DNA from: Macrostomum lignano
Taxonomy: Eukaryota
Length of the DNA stretch: 64,000 nucleotides
Assembly (NCBI GenBank): GCA_002269645.1
Contig: NIVC01001180.1
Coordinates: 62,001 to 126,000, forward strand
Direction of reading: 5' to 3'
The notes under the pieces are model-generated. The model was not told where the DNA came from. It did not search any database and saw nothing but the letters and a program-made list of their open reading frames with translations. Position numbers and translations under genes: made by a program. This document shows, in pieces, positions 18,181 to 62,400 of the stretch (positions are counted from its first letter, which is position 1; every line of letters begins with the position of its first letter).

Positions 18181-18733
18181 ATCTCCTCGTTCCTCTCTCT
18201 CTTCTTCTCTTCCTTTCATGTCGTAGGCCTTTAACAATATATATTTACATTGAAATTATGAAAATTATGTTTTTTCAACTCGTAATCCAACTTAGAGAAA
18301 CAATGGGCCTTATCTAATTAGTCATCCAGTCACCTTTACTCGAAAATGATGCGCCTGGCAACCGGCCGGACGAGTTTATACGAGGAGTCAGGACCAGCCA
18401 ATATGTCTCAGATACTTCTATAATCCCATGCTTTTGTTCCATAACTGGATTAATAAGCGCTGGGCCCGTTGAGTCAAAACATTCGGGTTGGCACCCTCTA
18501 GCCTGGCAACGGGGATTCCATTTTCGAATTTATTTTTTTACAAACTGTGAAGCTCGAGGGCATTTTTAGCGCATCCAGCAATACTGAGCAAAGTGGAAAA
18601 TGTGTGAAAATGACAATTAGGAATAATTGAGCAACTTGGGTCACGAAGTCAAGTTTTAATAACTCGGTTTGCGAATTAGCATTTCTTTGTTTTGTGGCCC
18701 ACCTGGATTAAGCAGTGAACTCTTGGTTCCATC

Positions 18734-20311: not shown

Positions 20312-23300
20312 TCAGAAGCTGACACAGACAGAGACAGGGGAGAGTCAGGAGAAGCTGACACAGACAGAGACGGGGGAGAGTCAGGAGAAGCTGACACAGA
20401 CAGAGACAGGGGAGAGTCAGGAGAAGCTGACACAGACAGAGACAACGGAGAGTCAGGAGAAGCTGACACAGACAGAGACAGGGGAGAGTCAGGAGAAGCT
20501 GACACAGACAGAGACAGGGAGAGTCAGGAGAAGCTGACACAGACAGAGACAGGGGAGAGTCAGGAGAAGCTGACACAGACAGAGACAGGGGAGAGTCAGG
20601 AGAAGCTGACACAGACAGACACAGGGAGAGTCAGGAGAAGCTGACACAGACAGAGACAGGGGGAGAGTCAGGAGAAGCTGACACAGACAGAGACAGGGGA
20701 GAGTCAGGAGAAGCTGACACAGACAGACACAGGGAGAGTCAGAAGAAACTGACACAGACAGACACAGGGAGAGTCAGGAGAAGCTGACACAGACAGAGAC
20801 AGGGGAGAGTCAGGAGAAGCTGACACAGACAGAGACAGGGGAGAGTCAGGAGAAGCTGACACAGACAGACACAGGGAGAGTCAGGAGAAGCTGACACAGA
20901 CAGAGACAGGGGAGAGTCAGGAGAAGCTGACACAGACAGAGACAGGGGAGAGTCAGGAGAAGCTGACACAGACAGAGACAGGGGAGAGTCAGGAGAAGCT
21001 GACACAGACAGAGACAGGGGAGAGTCAGGAGAAGCTGACACAGACAGAGACAGGGAGAGTCAGGAGAAGCTTACACAGACAGAGACAGGGGAGAGTCAGG
21101 AGAAGATGACACAGACAGAGACAGGGGAGAGTCAGGAGAAGCTGACACAGACAGAGACAGGGGAGAGTCAGGAGAAGCTGACACAGACAGAGACAACGGA
21201 GAGTCAGGAGAAGCTGACACAGACAGAGACAACGGAGAGTCAGGAGAAGCTGACACAGACAGAGACAACGGAGAGTCAGGAGAAGCTGACACAGACAGAG
21301 ACAGGGGAGAGTCAGGAGAAGCTGACACAGACAGAGACAGGGGGAGAGTCAGGAGAAGCTGACACAGACAGAGACAGGGAGAGTCAGGAGAAGCTGACAC
21401 AGACAGAGACAGGGGGAGAGTCAGGAGAAGCTGACACAGACAGAGACAGGGGGAGAGTCAGGAGAAGCTGACACAGACAGAGACAGGGGAGAGTCAGGAG
21501 AAGCTGACACAGACAGAGACAGGGGAGAGTCAGGAGAAGCTGACACAGACAGAGACAGGGGAGAGTCAGGAGAAGCTGACACAGACAGAGACAGGGGAGA
21601 GTCAGGAGAAGCTGACACAGACAGAGACAGGGGAGAGTCAGGAGAAGCTGACACAGACAGAGACAGGGGAGAGTCAGGAGAAGCTGACACAGACAGAGAC
21701 AGGGGAGAGTCAGGAGAAGCTGACACAGACAGAGACAGGGGAGAGTCAGGAGAAGCTGACACAGACAGAGACAGGGGAGAGTCAGGAGAAGCTGACACAG
21801 ACAGAGACAGGGGAGAGTCAGGAGAAGCTGACACAGACAGAGACAGGGAGAGTCAGGAGAAGCTGACACAGACAGAGACAGAGGGAGAGTCAGGAGAAGC
21901 TGACACAGACAGAGACAGGGGAGAGTCAGGAGAAGCTGACACAGACAGAGACAGGGAGAGTCAGGAGAAGCTGACACAGACAGAGACAGGGAGAGTCAGG
22001 AGAAGCTGACACAGACAGAGACAGGAGAGTCAGGAGAAGCTGACACAGACAGAGACAGGGAGAGTCAGGAGAAGCTGACACAGACAGAGACAGGGAGAGT
22101 CAGGAGAAGCTGACACAGACAGAGACAGGAGAGTCAGGAGAAGCTGACACAGACAGAGACAGGGGAGAGTCAGGAGAAGCTGACACAGACAGAGACAGGG
22201 GAGAGTCAGGAGAAGCTGACACAGACAGAGACAGGGGAGAGTCAGGAGAAGCTGACACAGACAGAGACAACGGAGAGTCAGGAGAAGCTGACACAGACAG
22301 AGACAGGGGAGAGTCAGGAGAAGCTGACACAGACAGAGACAGGGGAGAGTCAGGAGAAGCTGACACAGACAGAGACAGGGGAGAGTCAGGAGAAGCTGAC
22401 ACAGACAGAGACAGGGGAGAGTCAGGAGAAGCTGACACAGACAGACACAGGGAGAGTCAGGAGAAGCTGACACAGACAGAGACAGGGGAGAGTCAGGAGA
22501 AGCTGACACAGACAGAGACAGGGGAGAGTCAGGAGAAGCTGACACAGACAGACACAGGGAGAGTCAGGAGAAGCTGACACAGACAGACACAGGGAGAGTC
22601 AGGAGAAGCTGACACAGACAGAGACAGGGGAGAGTCAGGAGAAGCTGACACAGACAGAGACAGGGGAGAGTCAGGAGAAGCTGACACAGACAGACACAGG
22701 GAGAGTCAGGAGAAGCTGACACAGACAGAGACAGGGGAGAGTCAGGAGAAGCTGACACAGACAGAGACAGGGGAGAGTCAGGAGAAACTGACACAGACAG
22801 AGACAGGGGAGAGTCAGGAGAAACTGACACAGACAGACACAGGGAGAGTCAGGAGAAGCTGACACAGACAGAGACAGGGAGAGTCAGGAGAAGCTGACAC
22901 AGACAGAGACAGGGGAGAGTCAGGAGAAGCTGACACAGACAGAGACAGGGGAGAGTCAGGAGAAGCTGACACAGACAGAGACAGGGGAGAGTCAGGAGAA
23001 GCTGACACAGACAGAGACAGGGGAGAGTCAGGAGAAGCTGACACAGACAGAGACAGGGGAGAGTCAGGAGAAGCTGACACAGACAGAGACAGGGGAGAGT
23101 CAGGAGAAGCTGACACAGACAGAGACAGGAGAGTCAGGAGAAGCTGACACAGACAGAGACAGGGAGAGTCAGGAGAAGCTGACACAGACAGAGACAGGGG
23201 AGAGTCAGGAGAAGCTGACACAGACAGAGACAGGGGAGAGTCAGGAGAAGCTGACACAGACAGAGACAGGGGAGAGTCAGGAGAAGCTGACACAGACAGA

Positions 23301-26300
23301 GACAGGGGAGAGTCAGGAGAAGCTGACACAGACAGAGACAGGGGAGAGTCAGGAGAAGCTGACACAGACAGAGACAGGGAGAGTCAGGAGAAGCTGACAC
23401 AGACAGAGACAGGAGAGTCAGGAGAAGCTGACACAGACAGAGACAGGGGAGAGTCAGGAGAAGCTGACACAGACAGAGACAGGGGAGAGTCAGGAGAAGC
23501 TGACACAGACAGAGACAGGGGAGAGTCAGGAGAAGCTGACACAGACAGAGACAGGGGAGAGTCAGGAGAAGCTGACACAGACAGAGACAGGGGAGAGTCA
23601 GGAGAAGCTGACACAGACAGAGACAGGGGAGAGTCAGGAGAAGCTGACACAGACAGAGACAGGGAGAGTCAGGAGAAGCTGACACAGACAGAGACAGGGG
23701 AGAGTCAGGAGAAGCTGACACAGACAGAGACAGGGGAGAGTCAGGAGAAGCTGACACAGACAGAGACAGGGGAGAGTCAGGAGAAGCTGACACAGACAGA
23801 GACAGGAGAGTCAGGAGAAGCTGACACAGACAGAGACAGGAGAGTCAGGAGAAGCTGACACAGACAGAGACAGGAGAGTCAGGAGAAGCTGACACAGACA
23901 GAGACAGGGGAGAGTCAGGAGAAGCTGACACAGACAGAGACAGGGGAGAGTCAGGAGAAGCTGACACAGACAGAGACAGGGAGAGTCAGGAGAAGCTGAC
24001 ACAGACAGAGACAGGGGAGAGTCAGGAGAAGCTGACACAGACAGAGACAGGGGAGAGTCAGGAGAAGCTGACACAGACAGAGACAGGGAGAGTCAGGAGA
24101 AGCTGACACAGACAGAGACAGGGGAGAGTCAGGAGAAGCTGACACAGACAGAGACAGGGGAGAGTCAGGAGAAGCTGACACAGACAGAGACAGGGAGAGT
24201 CAGGAGAAGCTGACACAGACAGAGACAGGGAGAGTCAGGAGAAGCTGACACAGACAGAGACAGGGGAGAGTCAGGAGAAGCTGACACAGACAGAGACAGG
24301 GGAGAGTCAGGAGAAGCTGACACAGACAGAGACAGGGGAGAGTCAGGAGAAGCTGACACAGACAGAGACAGGGGAGAGTCAGGAGAAGCTGACACAGACA
24401 GAGACAGGGGAGAGTCAGGAGAAGCTGACACAGACAGAGACAGGGGAGAGTCAGGAGAAGCTGACACAGACAGAGACAGGGGAGAGTCAGGAGAAGCTGA
24501 CACAGACAGAGACAGGGGAGAGTCAGGAGAAGCTGACACAGACAGAGACAGGGAGAGTCAGGAGAAGCTGACACAGACAGAGACAGGGGAGAGTCAGGAG
24601 AAGCTGACACAGACAGAGACAGGGGAGAGTCAGGAGAAGCTGACACAGACAGAGACAGGGGAGAGTCAGGAGAAGCTGACACAGACAGAGACAGGGGAGA
24701 GTCAGGAGAAGCTGACACAGACAGAGACAGGGGAGAGTCAGGAGAAGCTGACACAGACAGAGACAGGGGAGAGTCAGGAGAAGCTGACACAGACAGAGAC
24801 AGGGGAGAGTCAGGAGAAGCTGACACAGACAGAGACAGGGAGAGTCAGGAGAAGCTGACACAGACAGAGACAGGGGAGAGTCAGGAGAAGCTGACACAGA
24901 CAGAGACAGGGGAGAGTCAGGAGAAGCTGACACAGACAGAGACAGGGGAGAGTCAGGAGAAGCTGACACAGACAGAGACAGGAGAGTCAGGAGAAGCTGA
25001 CACAGACAGAGACAGGGAGAGTCAGGAGAAGCTGACACAGACAGAGACAGGAGAGTCAGGAGAAGCTGACACAGACAGAGACAGGGGAGAGTCAGGAGAA
25101 GCTGACACAGACAGAGACAGGGGAGAGTCAGGAGAAGCTGACACAGACAGAGACAGGGAGAGTCAGGAGAAGCTGACACAGACAGAGACAGGGGAGAGTC
25201 AGGAGAAGCTGACACAGACAGAGACAGGGAGAGTCAGGAGAAGCTGACACAGACAGAGACAGGGGAGAGTCAGGAGAAGCTGACACAGACAGAGACAGGG
25301 GAGAGTCAGGAGAAGCTGACACAGACAGAGACAGGGGAGAGTCAGGAGAAGCTGACACAGACAGAGACAGGGGAGAGTCAGGAGAAGCTGACACAGACAG
25401 AGACAGGGGAGAGTCAGGAGAAGCTGACACAGACAGAGACAGGGGAGAGTCAGGAGAAGCTGACACAGACAGAGACAGGGGAGAGTCAGGAGAAGCTGAC
25501 ACAGACAGAGACAGGGGAGAGTCAGGAGAAGCTGACACAGACAGAGACAGGGGAGAGTCAGGAGAAGCTGACACAGACAGAGACAGGGGAGAGTCAGGAG
25601 AAGCTGACACAGACAGAGACAGGGAGAGTCAGGAGAAGCTGACACAGACAGAGACAGGGGAGAGTCAGGAGAAGCTGACACAGACAGAGACAGGGGAGAG
25701 TCAGGAGAAGCTGACACAGACAGAGACAGGGAGAGTCAGGAGAAGCTGACACAGACAGAGACAGGGGAGAGTCAGGAGAAGCTGACACAGACAGAGACAG
25801 GAGAGTCAGGAGAAGCTGACACAGACAGAGACAGGGGAGAGTCAGGAGAAGCTGACACAGACAGAGACAGGGAGAGTCAGGAGAAGCTGACACAGACAGA
25901 GACAGGGGAGAGTCAGGAGAAGCTGACACAGACAGAGACAGGGGAGAGTCAGGAGAAGCTGACACAGACAGAGACAGGGGAGAGTCAGGAGAAGCTGACA
26001 CAGACAGAGACAGGGGAGAGTCAGGAGAAGCTGACACAGACAGAGACAGGAGAGTCAGGAGAAGCTGACACAGACAGAGACAGGGGAGAGTCAGGAGAAG
26101 CTGACACAGACAGAGACAGGGGAGAGTCAGGAGAAGCTGACACAGACAGAGACAGGGGAGAGTCAGGAGAAGCTGACACAGACAGAGACAGGGAGAGTCA
26201 GGAGAAGCTGACACAGACAGAGACAGGGAGAGTCAGGAGAAGCTGACACAGACAGAGACAGGGGAGAGTCAGGAGAAGCTGACACAGACAGAGACAGGGA

Positions 26301-28075
26301 GAGTCAGGAGAAGCTGACACAGACAGAGACAGGGGAGAGTCAGGAGAGAGTCAGGAGAAGCTGACACAGACAGAGACAGGGGAGAGTCAGGAGAAACTGA
26401 CACAGACAGAGACAGGGGAGAGTCAGGAGAAACTGACACAGACAGACACAGGCAGAGTCAGGAGAAACTGACACAGACAGACACAGGGAGAGTCAGGAGA
26501 AACTGACACAGACAGAGACAGGGGAGAGTCAGGAGAAGCTGACACAGACAGAGACAGGGGAGAGTCAGGAGAAGCTGACACAGACAGACACAGGGAGAGT
26601 CAGGAGAAGCTGACACAGACAGAGACAGGGGAGAGTCAGGAGAAGCTGACACAGACAGAGACAGGGGAGAGTCAGGAGAAGCTGACACAGACAGAGACAG
26701 GGGAGAGTCAGGAGAAGCTGACACAGACAGAGACAGGGAGAGTCAGGAGAAGCTGACACAGACAGAGACAGGGAGAGTCAGGAGAAGCTGACACAGACAG
26801 AGACAGGGGAGAGTCAGGAGAAGCTGACACAGACAGAGACAACGGAGAGTCAGGAGAAGCTGACACAGACAGAGACAGGGAGAGTCAGGAGAAGCTGACA
26901 CAGACAGAGACAGGGGAGAGTCAGGAGAAGATGACACAGACAGAGACAGGGGAGAGTCAGGAGAAGCTGACACAGACAGAGACAGGGGAGAGTCAGGAGA
27001 AGCTGACACAGACAGAGACAACGGAGAGTCAGGAGAAGCTGACACAGACAAAGACAGGGGGAGAGTCAGGAGAAGCTGACACAGACAGGGACAGGGAGAG
27101 TCAGGAGAAGCTGACACAGACAGAGACAACGGAGAGTCAGGAGAAGCTGACACAGACAGAGACAGGGAGAGTCAGGAGAAGCTGACACAGACAGAGACAA
27201 CGGAGAGTCAGGAGAAGCTGACACAGACAGAGACAGAGGGAGAGTCAGGAGAAGCTGACACAGACAGAGACAGGGAGAGTCAGGAGAAGCTGACACAGAC
27301 AGAGACAACGGAGAGTCAGGAGAAGCTGACACAGACAGAGACAGGGGAGAGTCAGGAGAAGCTGACACAGACAGAGACAGGGGAGAGTCAGGAGAAGCTG
27401 ACACAGACAGAGACAGGGGAGAGTCAGGAGAAGCTGACACAGACAGAGACAGGGAGAGTCAGGAGAAGCTGACACAGACAGAGACAGGGGAGAGTCAGGA
27501 GAAGCTGACACAGACAGAGACAGGGGAGAGTCAGGAGAAGCTGACACAGACAGAGACAGGGAGAGTCAGGAGAAGCTGACACAGACAGAGACAGGGGAGA
27601 GTCAGGAGAAGCTGACACAGACAGACACAGGGAGAGTCAGGAGAAGCTGACACAGACAGAGACAGGGGAGAGTCAGGAGAAGCTGACACAGACAGAGACA
27701 GGGGAGAGTCAGGAGAAGCTGACACAGACAGAGACAGGGGGAGAGTCAGGAGAAGCTGACACAGACAGAGACAGGGAGAGTCAGGAGAAGCTGACACAGA
27801 CAGAGACAGGGGAGAGTCAGGAGAAACTGACACAGACAGAGACAGGGGAGAGTCAGGAGAAACTGACACAGACAGACACAGGGAGAGTCAGGAGAAGCTG
27901 ACACAGACAGAGACAGGGGAGAGTCAGGAGAAGCTGACACAGACAGAGACAGGGAGAGTCAGGAGAAGCTGACACAGACAGAGACAGGGGAGAGTCAGGA
28001 GAAACTGACACAGACAGAGACAGGGGAGAGTCAGGAGAAACTGACACAGACAGACACAGGGAGAGTCAGGAGAAG
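20312..28075. repeat. 7.8-kb 36-bp satellite (GACACAGACAGAGACAGGGGAGAGTCAGGAGAAGCT), >200 copies
   Basis: Highly homogeneous array; main variation is the G-run length. Confidence 0.99.
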
Positions 28076-48935: not shown

Positions 48936-49704
48936 GAAAAGACAAGCACAAACACACAAAGAAATGAAAAAATACACGGCAGATTTATATACTAGCGGGA
49001 ACAGCCAAGTAGATGTGAGAAAATGTGACGTAAGAAAATAATGCAGGGAAAAAAGTTTGGTGGAGCACAGAAAATAAATAAGCAATCAAATTGATGTAGC
49101 CGGAAAGTGCACAGCGGCAGACGGTGTGAGGTGGGGGGGGCTGCTGGACGGCATTCGCAGAGGGAAAAATTAAATCAAGTCCAGAATCCTGACAGGTCAA
49201 ATAGGATTTAAACAAAATGATGGAAAAATATTTCAATTGACAGCAGAAGAGCACCGAGTACATCGCTAAATTATAAGTATGCACACACATATAGAAAGAT
49301 CATTAGCTCATATCGTACTACTTGAATACAAAATTACAGTAGCATGTAGCGCACATTCGAACACAAATGGCATTGATAAATGAATGCAACAGAACGTGCT
49401 TGATAGAAGATAGCAAAGCAATTCCAGTGCCAAGGTTGATATAAGAAATGGAGACCAACTGGTAGAAATGCTTGCATTGTTTTCAAATATTAGTTAAAGG
49501 TGTTTATTAATACGCCACTGTAATTGTGAGAAGTAGCAACAGCAGCAGCAACAGTTATAAATAGCTATGAGCGCACCATTAGACTGTATAAATGTTTTAC
49601 AAAATGAAGGGCTGCATTATTTATCATTGGAATATATGAACACATAATTAGTGTAGGCAATTCAATTTTGTGAGCTAAGAGTTTGGGTGATAAAGTTATG
49701 GGAG

Positions 49705-51180
49705 AATTGTCGATAGATTATGGGAGGATTAACGATAGACTATGGAAGGATTTTCTATAGATTATGGGAGGATTAACGACATGTTATGGGAGGATTATCG
49801 ATAGATTGTGGGAGGATTATCGATAGTTGATGGGAGGATTATCTATAGATTATGGGAGGATTAACGATAGATTATGGGAGGATTAACGATAGACTATGGA
49901 AGGATTTTCTATAGATTATGGGAGGATTAACGATAGATTATGGGAGGATTAACGATAGACTATGGAAGGATTTTCTATAGATTATGGGAGGATTAACGAC
50001 ATGTTATGGGAGGATTATCGATAGATTGTGGGAGGATTATCGATAGTTGATGGGAGGATTATCTATAGATTATGGGAGGATTAACGATAGTTGATGGGAG
50101 GATTATCTATAGATTATGGGAGGATTAACGATAGATTATGGGAGGATTAACGACATGTTATGGGAGAATTATCGATAGGTTGTGGGAGGATTATCGATAG
50201 TTTATAGAAGGATTATCGATAGGTTGTGGGAGGATTATCGATAGTTTATAGAAGGATTATCGATAGGTTATGGGAGGATTAGCGATAGACTATGGAAGGA
50301 TTTTCTATAGATTATGGGAGGATTAACGACATGTTATGGGAGGATTATCGATAGATTGTGGGAGGATTATCGATAGTTGATGGGAGGATTATCTATAGAT
50401 TATGGGAGGATTAACGATAGTTGATGGGAGGATTATCTATAGATTATGGGAGGATTAACGATAGATTATGGGAGGATTAACGACATGTTATGGGAGAATT
50501 ATCTATAGATTATGGGAGGATTAACGATAGTTGATGGGAGGATTATCTATAGATTATGGGAGGATTAACGATAGATTATGGGAGGATTAACGACATGTTA
50601 TGGGAGAATTATCGATAGGTTGTGGGAGGATTATCGATAGTTTATAGAAGGATTATCGATAGATTGTGGGAAGATTAACGATAGGTTATGGGAGGATTAT
50701 CGATAGATTGTGGGAGGATTAACGATAGACTATGGAAGGATTTTCTATAGATTATGGGAGGATTAACGACATGTTATGGGAGAATTATCGATAGGTTGTG
50801 GGAGGATTATCGATAGTTTATAGAAGGATTATCGATAGATTGTGGGAAGATTAACGATAGGTTATGGGAGGATTATCGATAGATTGTGGGAGGATTAACG
50901 ATAGACTATGGAAGGATTTTCTATAGATTATGGGAGGATTAACGACATGTTATGGGAGAATTATCGATAGGTTGTGGGAGGATTATCGATAGTTTATAGA
51001 AGGATTATCGATAGGTTGTGGGAGGATTATCGATAGTTTATAGAAGGATTATCGATAGGTTATGGGAGGATTAGCGATAAATTATGGAAGGGTTATCGAT
51101 AAGTTATGGGAGGATTATCGATAAGTTATGGGAGGATTATCGATAAGTTATGTGAGGATTATCGATCAATTATGGGAGGA
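49705..51180. repeat. ~22-bp minisatellite (TTATGGGAGGATTATCGATAG[A]) with higher-order blocks
   Basis: Tandem units with recurring multi-unit variant blocks. Confidence 0.95.
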
Positions 51181-51406
51181 TATACTATACTACAAGGTAT
51201 ACTACAAGAGCAACCTGCCTACCAACTTTGAAACCCAAGAATTTCTCTCTTAGCTCATTTGGCTTGATTAATTATCAATCAAATAAATTGAAAAATAAAA
51301 TTGAAACTACTCTGGTATTAAAAAAAGTTAGTAAAGATATTAACCGAGCTATAAAATAATATTAATAGTAAGGGACACGCGATCGAGGACAGCCAGCCAG
51401 GAAGCA

Positions 51407-54400
51407 TCACTTGGCGGCAGTGGCAGCGGTGGCATGTCGTTGCGACCGAACTGTTGTCGAGCGAAGCTCCTGGCCGCGGCACACGGTGCACTTGAATAAT
51501 CCCGACGTATCGTAGTTCCTCTCCTCGCTGCAGGTGCCCAGATGCAGCCAGCCGTTGCAGAAGTCGCACTGGGCCCACTGGATCACCGTATAGGGCGGTA
51601 TGCTGGCCACTGGCTGGCCGGTCAAGCGGCTGACCATCAGGCAGGTGGGCGGGGCCAGGCAGCCGCACACGGAGCAGCAGGAGGAGAAACAGTCGGCGGC
51701 GGCGGCGGCGCTGCTATCGTCGGCCGGCAGAATTGCCGACAGTCTGGCCGACTTCTCAACGGGGCTGCCAGATTCGGAGCCGTCGTCTTGGCTGACTGAC
51801 GATGACGAAGTGGCTGGCGACTCGGACGAGCCGGCCTCGGAGGCGTTCTTTGTCTGAGATTGGTTTCGCAGGTTTGGGAGCACAGATACGATATAATATA
51901 ACTAGATGGGCAACTTGGCAAATTTGCGTGTAAGCTACTGCCAGTTCAGTAGTAAGTTCAAATAAAAGCATTTTAATGTATTTTACGACGAAACGTTTAA
52001 TAGCCCCTCATTTGACTGCCGACCTTGACCTTTAACCTTAAAATACCCTGAGGGGAATCTTCCAGAAAGCTGTAAACTGGGAGGGAATCTTCCAGAAAGC
52101 TGTAAACTAAAGGGAATCTTCCAGAAAGCTCTACTCGTAAACTGGGGGGATCTTCCAGACAGCTGTGAACTGGGGAATCTTCCAGACAGCTGTGAACTGG
52201 GGGATCTTCCAGACAGCTGTTAACTGGGGGATCTTCCAGACAGCTGTGAACTGGGGGATCTTCCAGACAGCTGTTAACTGGGGGATCTTCCAGACAGCTG
52301 TGAACTGGGGAATCTTCCAGACAGCTGTAAACTGGGGGATCTTCCAGAAAGATGTAAACTGGGGGATCTTCCAGAAAGATGTAAACTGGGGGATCTTCCA
52401 GAAAGATGTAAACTGGGGGATCTTCCAGAAAGCTGTACTCTGGGGGAATCTTCCAGAAAGCCAAACTGAGGATTCTCCGAGCTTTCCCAAAATCCGAAGA
52501 AACCTACAAACCTTGCAAACCGCGCACTCACCCGCTTTCGCGAAGTCTTAACCTCCACGCGGACGCCGTTGTCAAACTCCAACAGCTGGCGTTTCAACTC
52601 GTCGATCAGCAGGTCGGCCTCGGTAGTAGGAGAGCCGCCCCCGTCTGCGTCGCCACCACCGCCGCCGAGGCCGCCGTCGCAGTGGGGAGCTCCGACAGTC
52701 CTAGGTATACAGACGGTGGCGGCGGTGGTGGTGGCTTCGGCAGCCGCCATCGCCAAGGCCAGCGGGTCAACCATGCTTGCCGTTGGCTGCCGCTGCTGCT
52801 CGGAGGCCGACGCGTAAGAACCCGATCCCGATGAGGACGAAGGAATCGACGGTTCTGGCGCGGCGGCGGCGACGGCAGATGCTGACGGCAACTCCGGCGA
52901 GGCGTCGGACGAAGCGGCACCCGGCTGTTCCTCCGGCACGGCGGCGGCGGCAGCGGCGGCGGTTAGCAACGACGTGTGCTCAGCCAGGGCGACCACCTCG
53001 TCCCATTCGTCTTCGAATACTTCGTTTGGCGGTTCAACTTTGAATCGAGGCATCCGCTTTGGCGCTGCGCCGCCGCCGCTAGAAGTTCGCGGCTGCTTAG
53101 GAGATTCCTGTGACGAAGCCGGTTGCTGCTGTTGCTGTTGCTTCTGCGATGGCGGCGGCGGAGTCGGGTACACCTGGGGCAGCTCGGGCAGAATCAGGGA
53201 CACGAGATCGTCTAGGCCGGTGGTTCGCCAAACCTCCTTTAGATTGGCGGCCGCGACCGCTTTGGTGTAGGCGGAGCAGACGAACGGGCAGATGGTCAGG
53301 TTGCTGACTTTGTCGGCGGGCGCGCGACACATCTGCAGGTTCATCGACTTGGAGAAATGGTACTGCGGGGGGATGGCAGCAGGTGGATTTTGTTACTAGC
53401 CAGGCAAATTTAGTTTGATTTATAATAATAATTTAATAATTTCACCCGGACCCCGCGGAAAACTAAGTTGATACAGACAAGACAAAGACTCACAATTGAA
53501 GACATGAAGATATCCAGTTCAAACACTCACTGGCAGAATTGAATATATTAAACAAAGACAAAGACTCGCTTACACACCAGACACTGAGCACTAACAAAGA
53601 CTCGCTAAAATCAGACACTGAGCACTAACAAAGACTCACCCTGAACTTATTCAGCGCCGAGAAGCTGGCGCAGATGCCCAGATCGCCTGCATGAGGCGGC
53701 AGGGGGAACAGGATGATGCCTTTATGCCTAGCCTCCTCCAGCACGCTGATGGTGACGTACAGCAGGTGGGCATCGTAGAACAGCAGCACGGGATTGTCCG
53801 GACTGCAGCCGGAGTGCTCAGTAAAGTGCCGCAATAGCCAGCTCATAAAGATCTCCGGGCTAAGGTAGCCGGTTTCGGAGTAAGTGAACTTGGTGCCCTT
53901 AGTCGCGCCCAGCACCATCTCTTTGTACACCTGGGTGCCGCGGTACAGCAGAAATGGTGGCACCGAGTTGCCAACGGCGTTGCCTGCGCCAACCAGGGTG
54001 ACGTGTGGAAACTCGCTCTGGTAGGGCATCTGCAGCCGCTGGGTCTGGCAGTTCATCAGCCGGGGCGGGTGGGTGGCGCAGCTGATGGAGGCCTCGTCCA
54101 TTAGCCAGAAACGGGACAGGCTGAAGCCGGAGCTGAGCTTGTGCTTCAGCAGGACCTTGGTCAGGGCGCTGCGGGCGGGTTGGAGAGCGGCTTTGCTGTA
54201 GAGATCTAAGAGAATCTCAGATTGAGAGAATCTCAGTAGAGATCTAGGAGAATCTCAGTAGAGATCTAGGAGAATCTCAGTAGAGCTCTAGGAGAATCTC
54301 AGTAGAGATCTAAGAGAATCCCAGTAGAGCTCTAGGAGAATCTCAGTAGAGCTCTAGGACAATCTCAGTAGAGCTCTAGGAGAATCTCAGTAGAGCTCTA

Positions 54401-56449
54401 GGACAATCTCAGTAAAGCTCTAGGAGAATCTCAGTAGAGATCTAGGACAATCTCAGAACTCTAGGACAATCTCAGTAGAGATCTAAGAGAATCTCAGTAG
54501 AGATCTAGGACAATCTCTGTAGAGATCTAGCAGAATCTCATTAGAGATATAGGAGAATTTCAATATAGATTGGAGAATCTCATTAGAGATCTAAGAGAAT
54601 CTCAGTAAAGATTGAGAGAATCTCAGTAGAGATCGAGAGAATCTCAGTAAAGATTGAGAGAATCTCAGTAGAGATTGAGAGAATCTCAGTAGATATTGAG
54701 AGAATCTCATTAGAGATTGAGAGAATCTCAGTAGAGATTGTGAGAATCTCAGTAGACATTGAGAGAATCTCAGTAGAGATTGAGAGAATCTCAGACCTCA
54801 AATAATCTCAACAGGTGCTCAATAGACACTCACCGCAGGTAGGCAATCCTATTGGAGTCGGTGACCTCCTCCTCAATAACATAGCGCCTGTGATGACTGC
54901 TCATGGACACGCACTCTTTAATCTTCGGCCACCGGTGCGTGAACGAGTAGAGCCAGGAGGCGCTGGGCAGGTTGCACCGCTTGCTGCTCGGCGGCACCCC
55001 AACAGATGAGGGCGCCTTCCAGCCCGCAGAGGACTGCTCGGACATCCAAGTCTGCATCTCCATGGCCGAGGCCAGCGACACGAAGTCGTTGCTAGCCGAG
55101 TGCATCAGCAGCGGGTCGCCCTCCTTCGCTTGGTCGTCGATTACATCGTCATCAAGATTAGAGTCGCCGGACTCGCCGATGCTGAGACGAGCGGCGCGCG
55201 ATGTGATGCGCAGCAGATGATTGGCCGTCTCGGTGATGTGCTTGCGCAGCACAGTGTACCCGATGCGGTGCAGGAACAGCACGTGATCCACGATTCGCTG
55301 CTCCTCGCCGGCTGTGAAGAAAGTCTGCGGCCCAGGTCGGGTGCAGTTGATGTTCACCCGGCCGTGCAGCCGGTCGCGAAGGGTGCTCTCGGGCACCTGG
55401 CAGCGCGGGAGCGGTGGGAGTGCGCGAGAGTGAGAGTGAGATTAGGGTGAGATTCTAATGAGATTCTGTAGTGACAAAACGACATCTCCATACCCCAACC
55501 GCATAAGACCCTATAGATAAGAATAAGGTGAATAGGGTGAGGTTCCACGGATGAGATTTAGGTGAATAGGGTGAGATTATATGGGTGAGATTAAGGTGAA
55601 TAGGGTAAGACTCTATGAGTGATATTATCATTAAAAATGCGAGTGTTAGAATAGGCTGAAACTCGGAAGAATAGGATTCTAAAGAAAGCAGATCTACGGA
55701 TGAGATTAGGGTGAGATTCAGGGCCGAAGTCTCACCTTAAACTTAGTAGACGCAATCCGCAGCGAGACGCCCTGATTCACAACCGCATTATAAGCCTTGA
55801 GCATGTTCTCCTGCGACCACTGTCGGCGCATCCGGCCGTTGCCGCCGATTGGTCGGCCGCGCGGCATGCCAATAAAAATGTCGGCGCTACCGCCGCCGAC
55901 GGCGCCGCCGACGCAGGGCTTCGAGTACAAGTGGGTGTACAGGCGCCCACCGACCAGCACCCGATGGCTGTCTTCGTCCTGGTCTTCAACAGAGCCGGCA
56001 AGATAGCCGCCGCCACCACCGCCGCCGCCCACAACATCGTTTGGAAAGTTGTTGACGCTGTTGACGACGCTACAGGGGCCGCGGCTGCCGCGGCCGCCAC
56101 CGCCGCGACCTCCGCTTTCATCGTCGGACTCGCTGAGACAAATCTTGATAGGCATCAGCTTGTAGGTCTGGATAGCGCCGCCGCTGCTGTTCTCGCAGGG
56201 GCTGAACACCGAGGCCATGCTAACAGAGGCCGGCTTGGCCGCCGGCTGGGACGACGGCGCATCCTTGGTGGGATCCTCGGCCAGCTCAGAGTCGGACAGG
56301 AAGACAATTTTTTGCTGCTGATGCGCTTTGGCAGATTCGGACGAATCTAAAGTCTGTCGAATAGATTCGGTCATTGTAGTAGCCGATGATGAAGACGGAT
56401 TGGGAGGCTGACCTAGCAGAGACTGGTAGGCATCCACTGATCCTTGCAT
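51407..56449 (-). CDS. Intron-containing pogo/Tc5 (CENP-B/DDE_1)-type transposase-derived gene with psq-type HTH, CENP-B-type HTH, DDE-like domain and C-terminal PHD finger; exons 56449-55736, 55396-54834, 54195-53640, 53362-52532, 51853-51407 (~1036 aa; true 5' end uncertain)
   Basis: 'RRQWSQENMLKAYNAV...SLRIASTKFK|VPESTLRDRLHG' (psq HTH); 'GPQTFFTAGEEQRIVDHV...GY...PSASWLYSFTHRWP' (CENP-B HTH); 'FWLMDEAS...HVTLVGAGNAVGNSVPPFLLYRG...SETGYLSPEIFMSWL.RHF...PVLLFYDAH...GIILFPLPPH' (DDE_1); 'CSVC...WAQCDFCNGWLHLGTC...FKCTVC' (PHD). All four introns are GT-AG and phase-consistent; spliced length is 3111 nt. Confidence 0.87.
52045..52460. repeat. ~26-27-bp intronic minisatellite (ACTGGGGGATCTTCCAGA[C/A]AGCTGT[G/A]A)
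   Basis: Period 27 at 52331/52358. Confidence 0.94.
54198..54795. repeat. 21-22-bp intronic minisatellite (AGTAGAGATCTAGGAGAATCTC / AGTAGAGATTGAGAGAATCTC)
   Basis: Fills intron 54196-54833 of the pogo-derived gene and abuts the acceptor. Confidence 0.95.
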
Positions 56450-56629: not shown

Positions 56630-57835
56630 TAGCTACAAGTACTTAGAACTGGGAGATGAAGGCAGCTATGACCCTACTTAGAGCTGGAGGATGAAGGGAG
56701 CAATGACCCTACTTAGAGCTGGAGATGAAGGCAGCAATGACCCTACTTAGATCTGGGAGATGAAGGGAGCAATGACCCTACTTAGAGCTGGGAGATGAAG
56801 GGAGCAATGACTCTACTTAGAGCTGGTGGATGAAGGGAGCAATGACCCTACTTAGAGCTGGGAGATGAAGGGAGCAATGACCCTACTTAGAGCTGGGAGA
56901 TGAAGGGAGCAATGACCCTACTTAGAGCTGGAGATGAAGGCAGCAATGACCCTACTTAGATCTGGGAGATGAAGGGAGCAATGACCCTACTTAGAGCTGG
57001 AGATGAAGGCAGCAATGACCCTACTTAGATCTGGGAGATGAAGGGAGCAATGACCCTACTTAGATCTGGGAGATGAAGGGAGCAATGACTCTACTTAGAG
57101 CTGGTGGATGAAGGGAGCAATGACCCTACTTAGATCTGGGAGATGAAGGGAGCAATGAACCTACTTAGAGCTGGAGATGAAGGCAGCAATGACCCTACTT
57201 AGAGCTGGGAGATGAAGGGAGCAATGACCCTACTTAGATCTGGGAGATGAAGGGAGCAATGACCCTACTTAGAGCTGGGAGATGAAGGGAGCAATGACTC
57301 TACTTAGAGCTGGAGATGAAGGGAGCAATGACCCTACTTAGAGCTGGGTGATGAAGGGAGCAATGACCCTACTTAGAGCTGGGAGATGAAGGGAGCAATG
57401 ACCCTACTTAGAGCTGGGAGATGAAGGGAGCAATGACTCTACTTAGAGCTGGGAGATGAAGGGAGCAATGACTCTACTTAGAGCTGGAGATGAAGGGAGC
57501 AATGAACCTACTTAGAGCTGGAGATGAAGGCAGCAATGACCCTACTTAGAGCTGGGAGATGAAGGGAGCAATGACCCTACTTAGATCTGGGAGATGAAGG
57601 GAGCAATGACCCTACTTAGAGCTGGGAGATGAAGGGAGCAATGACCCTACTTAGAGCTGGGAGATGAAGGGAGCAATGACCCTACTTAGAGCTGGGTGAT
57701 GAAGGGAGCAATGACCCTACTTAGAGCTGGGTGATGAAGGGAGCAATGACTCTACTTAGAGCTGGGAGATGAAGGGAGCAATGACCCTACTTAGAACTGG
57801 GAGATGAAGGGAGCAATGAACCTACTTAGAGCTGA
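56630..57835. repeat. ~35-bp minisatellite (GATGAAGGGAGCAATGACCCTACTTAGAGCTGGGA)
   Basis: GAGCAATG at 57601 and 57636. Confidence 0.97.
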
Positions 57836-59473: not shown

Positions 59474-62400
59474 TCAATGCCGCACAATAGAAGTCTTAGG
59501 CCGAAGCATAGGATCCGGGAAGGACTTCTTCTTTTGCTGTTGCTGCTGCTGCCTCTTGCCAGTATCGTGTACAACCCGTTGATCATTCATGAGCAGGATG
59601 TCGTGCTCAAACAATACCTCGCGATTATTAATAACTGATCGTTCAGTGGAGCTGTGATGCTGCTGTTGGCCGTGCTGGTTTAGCAGCTCTGGCTCGCCTA
59701 GCAACACGGTATGATAATCGTCAGCTGACGCGCCCCGATCGCACCTGGGCAGGGTGCCATTAAATATTAACAATTCGTCAACCAATACGCTAAAATCTCG
59801 GACACCCCTAGACGGAGTTTTCGCATAGTTCCATAGGCGGATTTTGCTGACGCAGACTGGACGGTTAAACACCAAATAGAGACGATTGTCTGTGCCGGGC
59901 AGAATCGGGGCGAGCCAGCTGTGGCCGCCGGCTGGGCAGTCTAGTACACCGTCCACCTGCGCGGGGAGGGTGAACAGGTGCGAACTCGTAGTTAAAGTAA
60001 CGTACAAGCAGACTTTAATGGAGCTTTTACTCTTGTAACCAAAAGTAAGCATTAGTACTGAAGTACCTAGCAACAGTCCCTGAAGGACCTAGCAACACAT
60101 TCCCTGAAGTACCTAGCAACAGTCCCTAAAGTACCTAGCAACACAGTTCCTAAAGTACCTAGCAACAGTCCCTGAAGGACCTAGCAACACAGTCCCTGAA
60201 GTACCCAGCAACACAGTCCCTAAAGTACCTAGCAACACAGTCCCTGAAGTACCCAGCAACACAGTCCCTAAAGTACCTAGCAACACAGTCCCTGAAGTAC
60301 CCAGCAACACAGTCCCTAAAGTACCTAGCAACACAGTCCCTGAAGTACCTAGCAACACAGTCCCTAAAGTACCTAGCAACACAGTCCCTAAAGTACCTAG
60401 CAACACAGTCCCTAAAGTACCTAGCAACACAGTCCCTAAAGTACCTAGCAACACAGTCCCTAAAGTACCTAGCAACAGTCCCTGAAGTACCTAGCAACAC
60501 AGTCCCTGAAGTACCTAGCAACACAGTCCCTAAAGTACCTAGCAACACAGTCCCTAAAGTACCTAGCAACACAGTCCCTAAAGTACCTAGCAACAGTCCC
60601 TGAAGGACCTAGCAACACAGTCCCTGAAGTACCTAGCAACACAGTCCCTGAAGTACCTAGCAACACAGTCCCTGAAGTACCCAGCAACACAGTCCCTAAA
60701 GTACCTAGCAACACAGTCCCTAAAGTACCTAGCAACAGTCCCTGAAGGACCTAGCAACACAGTCCCTGAAGTACCTAGCAACACAGTCCCTGAAGTACCT
60801 AGCAACACAGTCCCTGAAGTACCCAGCAACACAGTCCCTAAAGTACCTAGCAACACAGTCCCTGAAGGACCCAGCAACAGTCCCTGAAGTACCCAGCAAC
60901 ACAGTCCCTGAAGTACCTATTAACACAGTCCCTAAAGTACCTAGCAACACAGTCCCTGAAGTACCCAGCAACACAGTCCCTAAAGTACCTAGCAACACAG
61001 TCCCTAAAGTACCTAGCAACACAGTCCCTAAAGTACCTAGCAACACAGTCCCTGAAGTACCTAGCAACACAGTCCCTAAAGTACCTAGCAACACAGTCCC
61101 TAAAGTACCTAGCAACACAGTCCCTAAAGTACCTAGCAACACAGTCCCTAAAGTACCTAGCAACAGTCCCTGAAGTACCTAGCAACACAGTCCCTGAAGT
61201 ACCTAGCAACACAGTCCCTAAAGTACCTAGCAACACAGTCCCTGAAGGACCCAGCAACAGTCCCTGAAGTACCCAGCAACACAGTCCCTGAAGTACCTAT
61301 TAACACAGTCCCTAAAGTACCTAGCAACACAGTCCCTGAAGTACCCAGCAACACAGTCCCTAAAGTACCTAGCAACACAGTCCCTAAAGTACCTAGCAAC
61401 ACAGTCCCTAAAGTACCTAGCAACACAGTCCCTGAAGTACCTAGCAACACAGTCCCTAAAGTACCTAGCAACACAGTCCCTAAAGTACCTAGCAACACAG
61501 TCCCTAAAGTACCTAGCAACACAGTCCCTAAAGTACCTAGCAACAGTCCCTGAAGTACCTAGCAACACAGTCCCTGAAGTACCTAGCAACACAGTCCCTA
61601 AAGTACCTAGCAACACAGTCCCTAAAGTACCTAGCAACACAGTCCCTAAAGTACCTAGCAACAGTCCCTGAAGGACCTAGCAACACAGTCCCTGAAGTAC
61701 CCAGCAACACAGTCCCTAAAGTACCTAGCAACACAGTCCCTGAAGTACCCAGCAACACAGTCCCTAAAGTACCTTGCAACACAGTCCCTGAAGTACCCAG
61801 CAACACAGTCCCTAAAGTACCTAGCAACACAGTCCCTGAAGGACCCAGCAACAGTCCCTGAAGTACCCAGCAACACAGTCCCTGAAGTACCCAGCAACAC
61901 AGTCCCTGAAGTACCTATCAACACAGTCCCTGAAGTACCTAGCAACACAGTCCCTGAAGTACCTAGCAACACAGTCCCTGAAGGAACTAGCAACACAGAA
62001 CAAAAAAACACAATTCTCAAGGTACGCACAGGACACAGTCCCCTGTAGGTGTAGAAATCAATCTTGGACGCCCGAACGGTATTAAATGAATTGAAGCCAG
62101 AAAATACGCACCAAATACTACTTACCAGCTTATCGGGCGTTCTAACATCATTTTCCACGCCATCTAAGCAGTTGATACTCTCGGGATGCGCAGCCACAAA
62201 GCCTCCGCGGCCGGCGCCGCAGCTAATAGCCTCGCCGCTTAACTGGATTGGACGGCCAATCTCATCGAATAGTTGCAGTTCGGTCAGGCCGATATAGTAC
62301 AGATCGCCGTGCGTATTTAATAGATTCAATTGGTAGACGAAACCGCAAGGCAGGCTGCCGGCTTGTTGATAATCGTCGTTGCCAACAGTCACAGGAGTTG

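What the first reader, a model, noticed from the sequence alone, without database searches (positions are those of the whole stretch)
51407..56449. Probable domesticated pogo-family transposase fused to a PHD finger: a candidate novel chromatin regulator
Seen: an intact ~1036-aa reading frame over five exons, with psq HTH + CENP-B HTH + DDE_1-like domain + PHD and long low-complexity, host-like extensions. The first two catalytic Asp are kept (WLMDEAS, LFYDAH). The region that normally reads LPPH-T-[ST]-H-x-x-QPLD-V-x-x-F reads LPPHAGDLGICASF: about 4 residues shorter, no QPLD, so the canonical third Asp (DD35D spacing) is missing, and the conserved S-H after the second Asp is also lost. I found no TIRs. 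Known: pogo transposases have been repeatedly domesticated (CENP-B, JRK, TIGD, POGZ, fission-yeast Abp1/Cbh), and some pogo-like elements natively carry a PHD. Inference: introns plus catalytic decay plus an intact frame indicate a host gene acting as a sequence-specific DNA binder and histone reader, possibly binding satellites as CENP-B does in a repeat-rich genome.
Basis: partly seen in the sequence, partly recalled or inferred. Interest (0 to 1): 0.72.

Follow-up and report, generated by a model that had tools for sequence, protein, structure and literature searches.

The report
Flatworm gene tamed from pogo transposon
This is an expressed host gene of the flatworm Macrostomum lignano that descends from a pogo-type "jumping gene" enzyme; the same gene is kept almost unchanged in tapeworms and blood flukes, so it has an old but still unknown job, most likely binding DNA and reading a histone mark.

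Summary
The window is Macrostomum lignano scaffold NIVC01001180.1.

- **Domains.** Pfam finds HTH_psq and DDE_1. The second HTH is below threshold. The C-terminal finger has no Pfam hit, but a family profile matches solved PHD fingers that read H3K4me3 and keeps both cage tryptophans.
- **Host gene, not a transposon.** It has no TIRs. The three assembly copies share the same neighbours. Orthologs exist in at least 15 trematode and cestode genera, in a 98/100 bootstrap clade. Nine introns are identical across parasitic flatworms, and one is shared exactly with Macrostomum. Cestode core dN/dS is about 0.01.
- **Correction 1.** The PHD-like finger is not a later fusion. It is native to the source transposon clade, where 29 of the 150 top relatives carry it.
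- **Correction 2.** The third-Asp region is not shorter. Ser594 sits at the exact DD35D spacing, and parasitic flatworms have Glu there.

Binding to satellites is untested. I rate this a new variant of a known kind, of moderate interest.

The parts
51407..56449 (-). Whole gene BOX15_Mlig002076g1 (PAA71213.1), ATG at 56449 to the stop codon at 51409-51407; 1027 aa
   Evidence: exons are 100% identical to locus L002 (NIVC01001180.1). Splice mapping reproduces the annotated protein P0004.
55736..56449 (-). Exon 1 (aa 1-238): Macrostomum-specific low-complexity N-terminus and the first half of the psq HTH; donor GTGAGA
54834..55396 (-). Exon 2 (aa 239-425 plus 2 nt): second half of the psq HTH, the CENP-B/Tc5-type HTH, and an 82-aa Macrostomum-specific insert (55210-54965)
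   Evidence: The insert has AF2 pLDDT below 50.
53640..54168 (-). It holds the DDE_1 core with D450 (54107-54087 = WLMDEAS), D558 (53783-53766 = LFYDAH) and the degenerate third-residue region LPPHAGDLGICASFSALNKF (53702-53643)
52532..53362 (-). Exon 4 (aa 603-879): C-terminal helices of the transposase core (to about 53213), then a low-complexity linker. The intron before it is at the same position and phase as intron 5 of the trematode and cestode orthologs
51407..51853 (-). Exon 5 (aa 880-1027): end of the linker and the PHD-like C4HC3 finger
55361..55819 (-). psq-type HTH (aa 211-250), split by intron 1 (55735-55397)
   Evidence: Pfam HTH_psq scores 23.5 bits against a cut-off of 20.4. This is the stretch most conserved with the parasitic-flatworm orthologs, about 70% identity. 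AF2 pLDDT is above 90.
51479..51676 (-). PHD-like finger (aa 939-1004): C-x2-C...W972-x2-C-x2-C-x2-W981-x-H-x3-C...F-x-C-x2-C
   Evidence: Invariant Cys, His and Trp columns. The profile hits solved PHD fingers at E 8.5e-5 to 7e-3. The AF2 model has pLDDT 75, and the top Foldseek hits are PHD fingers, though weakly.
54226..54794 (.). Intron 2 minisatellite (22-bp unit, 26.5 copies). Introns 1, 3 and 4 hold their own arrays at 55516-55610, 53558-53637 and 52052-52461
   Evidence: Array lengths differ between the three assembly copies.

Best explanation
The feature is a host gene of Macrostomum lignano that descends from the transposase of a pogo-superfamily DNA transposon. The transposons of that source clade already carried a C-terminal PHD-type finger. 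Domestication happened before the split between Macrostomorpha and the parasitic flatworms (Neodermata), because one orthologous, intron-bearing, single-locus gene is present in trematodes and cestodes.

Most likely mode of action (inferred):
- The bipartite N-terminal HTH (psq plus CENP-B/Tc5 type) binds a specific DNA sequence.
- The RNase-H-like core no longer transposes. The third catalytic residue is Ser in Macrostomum, and the 'SH' and 'QPLD' motifs are lost in all flatworm orthologs. The core probably serves as a scaffold or oligomerisation module.
- The C-terminal finger docks on a histone H3 tail, probably H3K4me3, through a two-tryptophan cleft like that of KDM5A PHD3.

Together this makes a sequence-specific, chromatin-state-sensitive nuclear factor.

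Shown: gene structure, domains, orthology, selective constraint, and that the finger is native to the transposon clade. Inferred: DNA binding, histone reading, and loss of catalysis.
For: - Gene model and identity.
- Domains: HTH_psq and DDE_1 pass the Pfam cut-offs. The AF2 core model has pLDDT 80.9 and pTM 0.79, and its best Foldseek matches are Mos1 and the SETMAR transposase domain, probability 0.97-1.0.
- Not a mobile copy: there are no TIRs. The three assembly copies share both neighbour genes, which fits the known redundancy of the DV1 assembly. No other copy lies in the window.
- Expression: the GenBank annotation derives from RNA-seq transcripts with repeat-overlapping transcripts removed.
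- Orthologs: Schistosoma (a 36-member cluster at 90% identity across at least 10 species), Trichobilharzia, Heterobilharzia, Calicophoron, Dicrocoelium, Fasciolopsis, Clonorchis, Paragonimus, Echinostoma, Echinococcus, Hymenolepis, Schistocephalus and Anoplocephala.
- Phylogeny: the flatworm clade has 98/100 NJ bootstraps among 105 core sequences.
- Introns: nine are identical in position and phase in Schistosoma, Echinococcus and Anoplocephala. Macrostomum shares one exactly (phase 0...KFR|YHF against ...AFN|SYF).
- Synteny: Aminotran_3 ... KIDINS220 is conserved between Anoplocephala and Echinococcus.
- Selection (Anoplocephala against Echinococcus): core dN 0.034 with dS above 3; finger dN 0.10 with dS above 2; linker dN 0.41. 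Across Neodermata the core is 84-100% conserved by column, and the HTH region 98-100%.
- Finger: 29 of the 150 top relatives carry it, most with intact DD35D. The profile matches the PHD fingers of PHF23, KDM5B, PHF13, KDM5A, Bye1 and TAF3. The two invariant Trp align with the two Trp of KDM5A PHD3 that form the K4me3 cleft (PMC9172573).
- Catalytic site: D450 and D558 are kept, S594 sits at the DD35 position, and the surrounding loop (core residues 383-390) has pLDDT below 50.
Against: - There is no direct evidence for DNA binding, histone binding, nuclear localisation or any phenotype.
- The Macrostomum finger itself has no Pfam PHD hit, and its H-x3-C spacing is atypical. Foldseek E-values for the finger are weak, 0.13 and above.
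- Loss of catalysis is not proven. Two Asp are invariant, parasitic-flatworm orthologs have Glu at the third position (DD34E), and Macrostomum has D588 nearby at a DD29 spacing. That spacing lies within the DD29-56D range reported for pogo elements (PMC7386202).
- I could not obtain model coordinates to measure active-site geometry.
- Selection in the Macrostomum lineage itself could not be measured. The three copies differ at only 4-6 of about 3,090 exonic sites, and the introns are also nearly identical.
- No planarian, monogenean or catenulid ortholog was seen, so the age of the domestication rests on one free-living species plus Neodermata.
Confidence: 0.7

Rival explanations
1. The protein is a domesticated transposase that is still catalytically active. 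It would be a chromatin-targeted nuclease or recombinase, as with RAG1/RAG2, PiggyMac or Kat1, rather than a mere DNA-binding scaffold.
For: - D450 and D558 are invariant in all flatworm orthologs.
- Parasitic-flatworm orthologs have an acidic Glu at the third position, in a fully conserved HCVENTCF motif.
- The whole RNase-H-like core, not only the HTH region, is under very strong constraint, with dN/dS about 0.01.
- Macrostomum has D588 at a DD29 spacing that occurs in some pogo elements.
- A PHD coupled to a DDE recombinase has a precedent in RAG2-RAG1 (general knowledge).
Against: - The 'SH' after the second Asp and the 'QPLD' motif are near-universal in the intact relatives. Both are lost in every flatworm ortholog.
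- Macrostomum has Ser at the canonical third position, and the loop is modelled with low confidence.
- POGZ keeps a full DD35D triad yet showed no transposition activity (PMC9976928).
- From general knowledge, changing the third Asp of mariner Mos1 to Glu inactivates it (not checked here).
- The Glu is not conserved between Macrostomum and Neodermata, which argues against an ancestral catalytic requirement.
Confidence: 0.15
2. The locus is a young or decaying transposon copy, or a transposon captured in a duplicated segment. Its intact frame and its three copies would reflect recent amplification rather than host function.
For: - The three copies are nearly identical in exons (0.13-0.19% divergence) and in introns (0.3-1%), so no selection signal can be read inside the species.
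- The genome is very repeat-rich.
- The closest non-flatworm relatives look like transposases.
Against: - All three copies have the same flanking genes on both sides.
- There are no TIRs.
- The gene has four spliceosomal introns, whereas transposon relatives such as L008 and L009 are intronless.
- Orthologs with shared intron positions and extreme purifying selection exist across Neodermata.
- The GenBank annotation excluded transcripts overlapping repeat annotations.
Confidence: 0.03
3. The C-terminal Cys-rich module is not a histone-reading PHD. It would be a structural or DNA/RNA-binding or protein-binding zinc finger (treble-clef, CW or FYVE-like), so the protein is a DNA binder without chromatin-mark reading.
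For: - The Macrostomum finger has no Pfam PHD hit.
- Only 13 of 28 family members give weak PHD hits (best E 0.0027), and 3 hit zf-CW.
- The H-x3/4-C spacing is atypical.
- Foldseek statistics are weak, and a FYVE domain ranks second.
- The first zinc-binding half, with its long and variable C2-to-C3 loop, is poorly modelled (pLDDT 53-69).
Against: - Profile-to-sequence hits to solved structures are almost exclusively PHD fingers, led by H3K4me3 readers.
- The C4HC3 ligand order is complete and invariant.
- Both Trp that form the K4me3 cleft of KDM5A PHD3 are invariant across 35 family members.
- About 45 of the top 50 Foldseek hits are PHD fingers.
Confidence: 0.2

Closest known systems
POGZ and POGK (vertebrate genes domesticated from Passer-family pogo transposases)
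   Same: - Both are host genes built from a complete pogo-type transposase (HTH DNA-binding region plus DDE_1 core) joined to an extra chromatin-related module.
- The catalytic core is retained but is inactive in transposition assays (PMC9976928; PMC7386202).
- The intact transposon relatives found here are DD35D, the spacing typical of Passer.
   Different: - This is an independent domestication in flatworms, not vertebrates.
- The extra module is a C-terminal PHD-like finger that was already part of the transposase. In POGZ and POGK it is an N-terminal ZNF or KRAB acquired by fusion.
- Family assignment to Passer was not tested by phylogeny with reference Passer sequences.
CENP-B, fission-yeast Abp1/Cbh1/Cbh2 and other CENP-B-like proteins (PMC4231638)
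   Same: Both are pogo-like transposases recurrently domesticated into DNA-binding proteins, with psq/CENP-B-type HTH domains and an eroded DDE_1 core.
   Different: - There is no sequence-level match to the solved CENP-B DNA-binding domain.
- There is no CENP-B dimerisation domain.
- The PHD-like finger is absent from CENP-B.
- No evidence links the flatworm gene to centromeres or satellites.
PHD-bearing pogo-like transposases
   Same: - The architecture is the same: psq HTH, Tc5 HTH, DDE_1, linker, then a C-terminal CCVC...W.QCD.C.HW.HL..C...F.CP.C finger.
- These are the closest non-flatworm relatives.
   Different: - They are intronless ORFs with intact DGHxSH and QPLD motifs.
- At least one is flanked by inverted repeat motifs.
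- The flatworm gene has introns, no TIRs, a degenerate third catalytic position and lineage-specific low-complexity extensions.
RAG1-RAG2, and chromodomain integrases of chromoviruses (functional analogy only)
   Same: A DDE-type recombinase or transposase is coupled to a histone-mark reader: the RAG2 PHD reads H3K4me3, and the chromovirus chromodomain reads heterochromatin marks (general knowledge). This suggests why a transposase would natively carry a PHD, namely to target integration.
   Different: The transposase superfamilies are unrelated (Transib; retroviral-type integrase). No catalytic activity is expected here.
KDM5A and KDM5B PHD3, and the PHF13, PHF23 and TAF3 PHD fingers
   Same: These are the best profile matches to the finger. 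They share the W-x-Q-C-D-x-C-x-x-W-x-H core, including both cage Trp of KDM5A PHD3.
   Different: - The match covers only the second half of the finger well.
- The spacing is H-x3/4-C instead of H-x2-C.
- The first inter-cysteine loop is long and variable.
- E-values are modest (8.5e-5 to 7e-3).

Membership tests
pogo-superfamily transposase-derived protein (Pfam DDE_1 type) | DDE_1 (PF03184) catalytic-core domain above the Pfam gathering score | tested here: met
   27.6 bits against a cut-off of 22, residues 493-631 of the 1036-aa model. Orthologs score 38.4 bits.
pogo-superfamily transposase-derived protein (Pfam DDE_1 type) | N-terminal bipartite DNA-binding region: psq HTH plus CENP-B/Tc5 HTH | tested here: inconclusive
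   HTH_psq is met: 23.5 bits against 20.4. HTH_Tnp_Tc5 is below threshold in Macrostomum (13.4) and the tapeworm (14.6) against 22.2. It passes only in the relative P0003 (22.9). The AF2 model shows helical bundles at both positions.
pogo-superfamily transposase-derived protein (Pfam DDE_1 type) | RNase-H-like fold of Tc1/mariner-type transposases | tested here: met
   The AF2 model has pLDDT 80.9. The top Foldseek hits are Mos1 and the SETMAR/Metnase transposase domain, probability 0.97-1.0, E 2e-3 to 1e-2.
Active (autonomous) pogo-like transposon | Complete DDD catalytic triad with the clade's DD35D spacing and the conserved DGHxSH and QPLD motifs | tested here: not met
   D450 and D558 are present. 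Position 594, 35 residues after D558, is Ser. SH and QPLD are absent.
Active (autonomous) pogo-like transposon | Terminal inverted repeats (and TA duplication) flanking an intronless ORF; multiple dispersed copies | tested here: not met
   There are no TIRs within 49-59 kb. The gene has four introns. Three copies share both neighbour genes. No other fragment lies in the window. A whole-genome copy count was not possible with these tools.
Domesticated transposase (host gene) | Orthologs in other species forming one clade, with conserved gene structure | tested here: met
   The flatworm clade has 98/100 bootstraps. Orthologs occur in at least 15 neodermatan genera. Nine introns are shared among trematodes and cestodes, and one is shared exactly with Macrostomum.
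Domesticated transposase (host gene) | Conserved genomic position (synteny) across species | tested here: inconclusive
   Synteny is conserved between the cestodes Anoplocephala and Echinococcus (Aminotran_3 ... KIDINS220) and among the three Macrostomum copies. It is not conserved between Macrostomum and cestodes, which is expected at that distance.
Domesticated transposase (host gene) | Purifying selection on the coding sequence | tested here: met
   Anoplocephala against Echinococcus: core dN 0.034 with dS above 3; finger dN 0.10 with dS above 2. This is not measurable within Macrostomum because the copies are nearly identical.
Domesticated transposase (host gene) | Expression as a spliced mRNA | tested here: inconclusive
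   The evidence is indirect. The GenBank gene models of Mlig_3_7 come from an RNA-seq-based transcriptome with repeat-overlapping transcripts removed (PMC5730564). No reads were examined here.
PHD finger (PF00628) | Cys4-His-Cys3 zinc-ligand pattern | tested here: met
   C-x2-C ... C-x2-C-x4-H-x3-C ... C-x2-C, invariant in 35 family members. The H-to-C spacing is x3/x4 instead of x2.
PHD finger (PF00628) | Significant match to the Pfam PHD model | tested here: not met
   The Macrostomum and tapeworm fingers give no hit at E<=10. 13 of 28 family members give weak hits, best E 0.0027.
PHD finger (PF00628) | Profile or fold similarity to solved PHD fingers | tested here: inconclusive
   The profile hits PHF23, KDM5B, PHF13, KDM5A and TAF3 at E 8.5e-5 to 7e-3. 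The top Foldseek hits are nearly all PHD fingers, but E is 0.13 or higher and TM-scores are 0.35-0.5. The model has pLDDT 75.
PHD finger (PF00628) | Binding of a histone tail (e.g. H3K4me3) through an aromatic cage | not testable with these tools
   Only the conservation of the two Trp equivalent to KDM5A W1625 and W1635 could be shown.
CENP-B / CENP-B-like centromere proteins | Orthology or close similarity to the CENP-B DNA-binding domain; binding to a satellite box; C-terminal dimerisation domain | tested here: not met
   The flatworm core profile finds no CENP-B chain among solved structures at E<=1. There is no dimerisation domain. Satellite binding was not testable.

The most novel reading that the evidence does not exclude
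The most novel reading has two parts.

1. A previously undescribed clade of pogo-superfamily transposons natively carries an H3K4me3-reader-type PHD finger, presumably to steer integration toward active chromatin.
2. One such element was domesticated at the base of the rhabditophoran flatworms into an essential, ultra-conserved gene. In parasitic flatworms this gene still has a full acidic D-D-E triad. It could therefore act as a chromatin-mark-guided nuclease or recombinase rather than a passive DNA binder.

If so, it would be a flatworm-specific and hence potentially druggable enzyme.
Probability: 0.12. Interest if true: 0.8.

Novelty: new variant of a known kind. Interest (0 to 1): 0.5.

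Why it matters
Domestication of pogo transposases is well known: CENP-B, TIGD, JRK, POGZ and POGK. The general kind is therefore not new. Three points stand out.

- **Age and constraint.** One orthologous gene spans free-living Macrostomum and all sampled flukes and tapeworms. Its DNA-binding region is 98-100% conserved between trematodes and cestodes. This points to an important function that is still uncharacterised, and that may be specific to flatworms (non-flatworm genomes were not searched for orthologs), in a phylum that includes major human and livestock parasites.
- **Architecture.** A transposase core carries a native PHD-type finger with the two-Trp H3K4me3 cleft signature. None of the three pogo surveys I checked mentions a PHD. 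This suggests a way for DNA transposons to read chromatin, and it would have given the host a ready-made factor that is specific for both DNA sequence and histone mark.
- **Testability.** M. lignano has transgenesis and RNAi, and schistosomes have RNAi.

Tried and rejected
- A full-length query in the word-indexed protein search returned only the protein's own cluster, because low-complexity words filled the candidate list. The trimmed core worked.
- Pfam on the isolated finger and on the isolated second HTH gave nothing, or only sub-threshold hits.
- The flatworm core profile against PDB sequences found no CENP-B or any transposase. Only fold comparison linked it to Mos1 and SETMAR.
- dN/dS among the three Macrostomum copies cannot be computed, because only 4-6 exonic differences exist and the introns are also nearly identical.
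- I could not test whether D588 or S594 completes the active site, because the structure tool returns no coordinates. I relied on the gap-free alignment, the secondary structure and pLDDT.
- I considered that the QPLD-less group P0003/P0010/P0030/P0049 might be non-flatworm orthologs. I rejected this because it grouped with the flatworm clade in only 1 of 100 bootstraps.
- Literature searches for a described PHD-bearing pogo clade, or for this flatworm gene, found nothing.
- I considered a transposon-relic or pseudogene reading and rejected it (see rival explanations).
- I saw no planarian, monogenean or catenulid ortholog, but the searches were capped and may not cover those proteomes.

Full report
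**1. What is in the sequence**

The region 51407-56449 holds a minus-strand gene of five exons with canonical GT-AG introns. The word-indexed protein search identified it as a Macrostomum lignano protein. Its 90% cluster has three full-length GenBank members: PAA77811.1, PAA71213.1 and PAA94027.1, all named 'hypothetical protein' or 'HTH psq-type domain-containing protein'.

The window's exons are 100% identical to locus L002. That locus is scaffold NIVC01001180.1, gene BOX15_Mlig002076g1, 1027 aa.

The shorter form aligns without gaps with the tapeworm ortholog. The GenBank models of this assembly are derived from RNA-seq transcripts (PMC5730564). I therefore take the annotated model as the better one.

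Final exons are 56449-55736, 55396-54834, 54168-53640, 53362-52532 and 51853-51407.

**2. Domains**

- Pfam reports only HTH_psq (23.5 bits) and DDE_1 (27.6 bits), both above their cut-offs.
- The CENP-B/Tc5-type HTH is below threshold in Macrostomum and in the tapeworm. It reaches threshold in one relative.
- An AlphaFold2 model of residues 205-667 was built on 108 aligned sequences. It has mean pLDDT 80.9 and pTM 0.79.
- Two parts of that model fall below pLDDT 50. One is an 82-residue Macrostomum-specific insert in the second HTH. The other is an 8-residue loop at the third catalytic position.
- Foldseek places the model with the Mos1 mariner transposase and the SETMAR transposase domain, probability 0.97-1.0.

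**3. Transposon or host gene?**

- There are no terminal inverted repeats around the gene. The only inverted matches are GCC-type low-complexity coding repeats.
- No other pogo-like fragment lies in the window.
- The three assembly copies all have a DUF4457/KATNIP gene upstream. L001 and L002 also have an SRCR-lectin-kringle-trypsin gene downstream. No downstream gene was listed for L003.
- The copies differ at 4-6 of about 3,090 exonic sites. They differ mainly in the length of intronic minisatellites.
- This pattern matches the documented redundancy of the DV1 assembly: 180 Mb in duplicated blocks at 95% identity or more, and extra large chromosomes (PMC5730564). The copies are homeologous or allelic, not dispersed insertions.

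**4. Orthologs**

The trimmed core found a 762-aa protein in the tapeworm Anoplocephala perfoliata with the same architecture, including the C-terminal Cys-rich finger. A profile search then listed orthologs of 750-810 aa in two groups:

- Trematodes: Schistosoma (a 36-member cluster at 90% identity that spans S. japonicum, the S. haematobium group and S. rodhaini), Trichobilharzia, Heterobilharzia, Calicophoron, Dicrocoelium, Fasciolopsis, Clonorchis, Paragonimus and Echinostoma.
- Cestodes: Echinococcus, Hymenolepis and Schistocephalus.

In a neighbour-joining tree of 105 full-length cores from the exhaustive representative search, Macrostomum, Anoplocephala and Schistosoma form a clade in 98 of 100 bootstraps.

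Schistosoma, Echinococcus and Anoplocephala share nine introns at identical positions and phases. Macrostomum shares one of them exactly. It is phase 0, just after the third-catalytic-residue region...NKFR|YHF against ...AFN|SYF. Another Macrostomum intron lies five codons from a neodermatan one.

Anoplocephala and Echinococcus share flanking genes, Aminotran_3 and KIDINS220.

Selection between these two cestodes:

| Region | dN | dS |
|---|---|---|
| Core | 0.034 | above 3 (saturated) |
| Finger | 0.10 | above 2 |
| Linker | 0.41 | about 2.6 |

Across Neodermata the HTH region is 98-100% conserved by column. The linker is only 20-50% conserved.

This is the signature of an old host gene with two constrained modules joined by a free linker.

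**5. The finger**

Twenty-nine of the 150 best representatives carry the same C-terminal module: CCVC...P...W.QCD.C.HW.HL..C...F.CP.C. These include many with intact DGHxSH and QPLD motifs, which look like active transposases. One such protein is an intronless ORF flanked by inverted copies of a 12-15-nt motif. The finger is therefore native to the source transposon clade and was not fused later.

Is it a PHD?
- The eight ligands follow the C4HC3 order. The H-x3/4-C spacing is atypical.
- The Macrostomum finger alone has no Pfam hit. Thirteen of 28 relatives hit PHD weakly.
- The family profile hits solved PHD fingers almost exclusively. The leading hits are H3K4me3 readers: PHF23, KDM5B PHD3, PHF13, KDM5A PHD3, Bye1 and TAF3, at E 8.5e-5 to 7e-3.
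- In the KDM5A alignment, the family's two invariant Trp (W972 and W981 in the Macrostomum protein) pair with the two Trp of KDM5A PHD3. Those two Trp, W1625 and W1635, form the trimethyl-lysine cleft (PMC9172573).
- An AF2 model has pLDDT 75. Its Foldseek hits are nearly all PHD fingers, but the statistics are weak.

I conclude that this is a divergent PHD-type finger. It is probably a methyl-lysine reader, but that is unproven.

**6. The catalytic site**

The intact relatives are DD35D. That spacing is typical of the Passer and Fot families (PMC7386202).

In the flatworm genes the first two Asp are invariant. The 'SH' after the second Asp is gone in all of them.

The third-Asp region aligns with no gaps for Macrostomum and with a single one-residue gap for Neodermata:

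| Lineage | Sequence | Third position |
|---|---|---|
| Intact transposon relatives | QPLDVGCFGPF | Asp (DD35D) |
| Neodermata | HCVENTCFWAF | Glu (DD34E) |
| Macrostomum | ICASFSALNKF | Ser594, exactly 35 residues after D558 |

Loss of transposition is likely. POGZ keeps DD35D and is still inactive (PMC9976928). A residual or altered nuclease activity cannot be excluded, especially in Neodermata.

**7. Mechanism proposed**

- The psq plus Tc5-type HTH pair binds a specific DNA sequence. This is the most conserved part of the protein.
- The RNase-H-like core acts as a scaffold or oligomerisation platform.
- The PHD-like finger docks on H3K4me3 or a related H3-tail state.

Only the anatomy and the evolutionary constraint are shown. 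Every biochemical step is inferred. The locus is simply embedded in a genome region full of unrelated minisatellites.

**8. Novelty**

The protein is in public databases, either unnamed or carrying a neighbour gene's name. I found no paper describing it or a PHD-bearing pogo clade. The two 2020 pogo surveys and the Passer paper do not contain the term 'PHD'. Targeted searches returned nothing relevant.

Domesticated pogo transposases are a known kind. This one is a new, flatworm-wide case with an architecture not described for the known ones. I rate it a new variant of a known kind, interest about 0.5.

Noticed in passing
window 1-64000, e.g. 20314-28075, 15815-18202, 4330-6447, 12263-13909, 60058-61998, 49696-51181, 56640-57834: The window is crowded with dozens of unrelated minisatellite arrays with units of 16-45 bp. 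They include a 7.8-kb array of a 36-bp unit (217 copies, 97% matches) and a 2.3-kb (TCCTC)n tract with almost pure strand asymmetry. Each intron of the pogo-derived gene holds its own array.
   Followed up: partly
L001, L002, L003 (introns 3 and 4 of the gene; window 53363-53639 and 51854-52531): The three assembly copies are nearly identical in sequence. They differ by 160-177-nt length changes in the intronic arrays and by 6-nt in-frame indels in poly-Q and poly-G coding runs. The pattern of shared differences is mosaic, which suggests gene conversion or mixed haplotypes.
   Followed up: partly
Proteins P0013, P0023, P0032, P0036, P0041, P0047 and others; locus L008:147-184, 2518-2538 and 2720-2734: A clade of apparently intact DD35D pogo-like transposases from unidentified animal samples carries a C-terminal PHD-type finger. 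One 2.7-kb contig has an intronless 590-aa ORF flanked by inverted copies of the motif AAGTTCGTGGAT. The pogo surveys I checked do not mention a PHD.
   Followed up: partly
Proteins P0003, P0010, P0030, P0049 (Logan and other contigs): A second group of relatives also lacks QPLD (LPPH-xSHIVxE...). It is not sister to the flatworm clade. It may be another independent domestication in an unidentified host.
   Followed up: no
Proteins P0018, P0028, P0030: P0018 joins an N-terminal BTB/POZ-like region to a pogo-like transposase. P0028 and P0030 share a distinct N-terminal domain (ME[ST]YL..LYVT.EQE.ALK..F...GW...KPDLSV) ahead of the transposase.
   Followed up: no
GenBank names of orthologs P0159/P0160, P0188, P0190: Several orthologs carry names that appear to belong to neighbouring genes: '39S ribosomal protein L22 mitochondrial' (S. 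japonicum, Fasciolopsis) and 'kinase D interacting substrate of 220 kDa' (Hymenolepis). KIDINS220 is indeed the downstream neighbour in cestodes. These are probable annotation carry-overs.
   Followed up: partly
L005/L006 (Schistosoma rodhaini, two assemblies), gene at 10001-33994: The schistosome ortholog spans 24 kb because its nine introns are long, up to 7.9 kb. The cestode genes span 5-8 kb with the same intron positions.
   Followed up: yes
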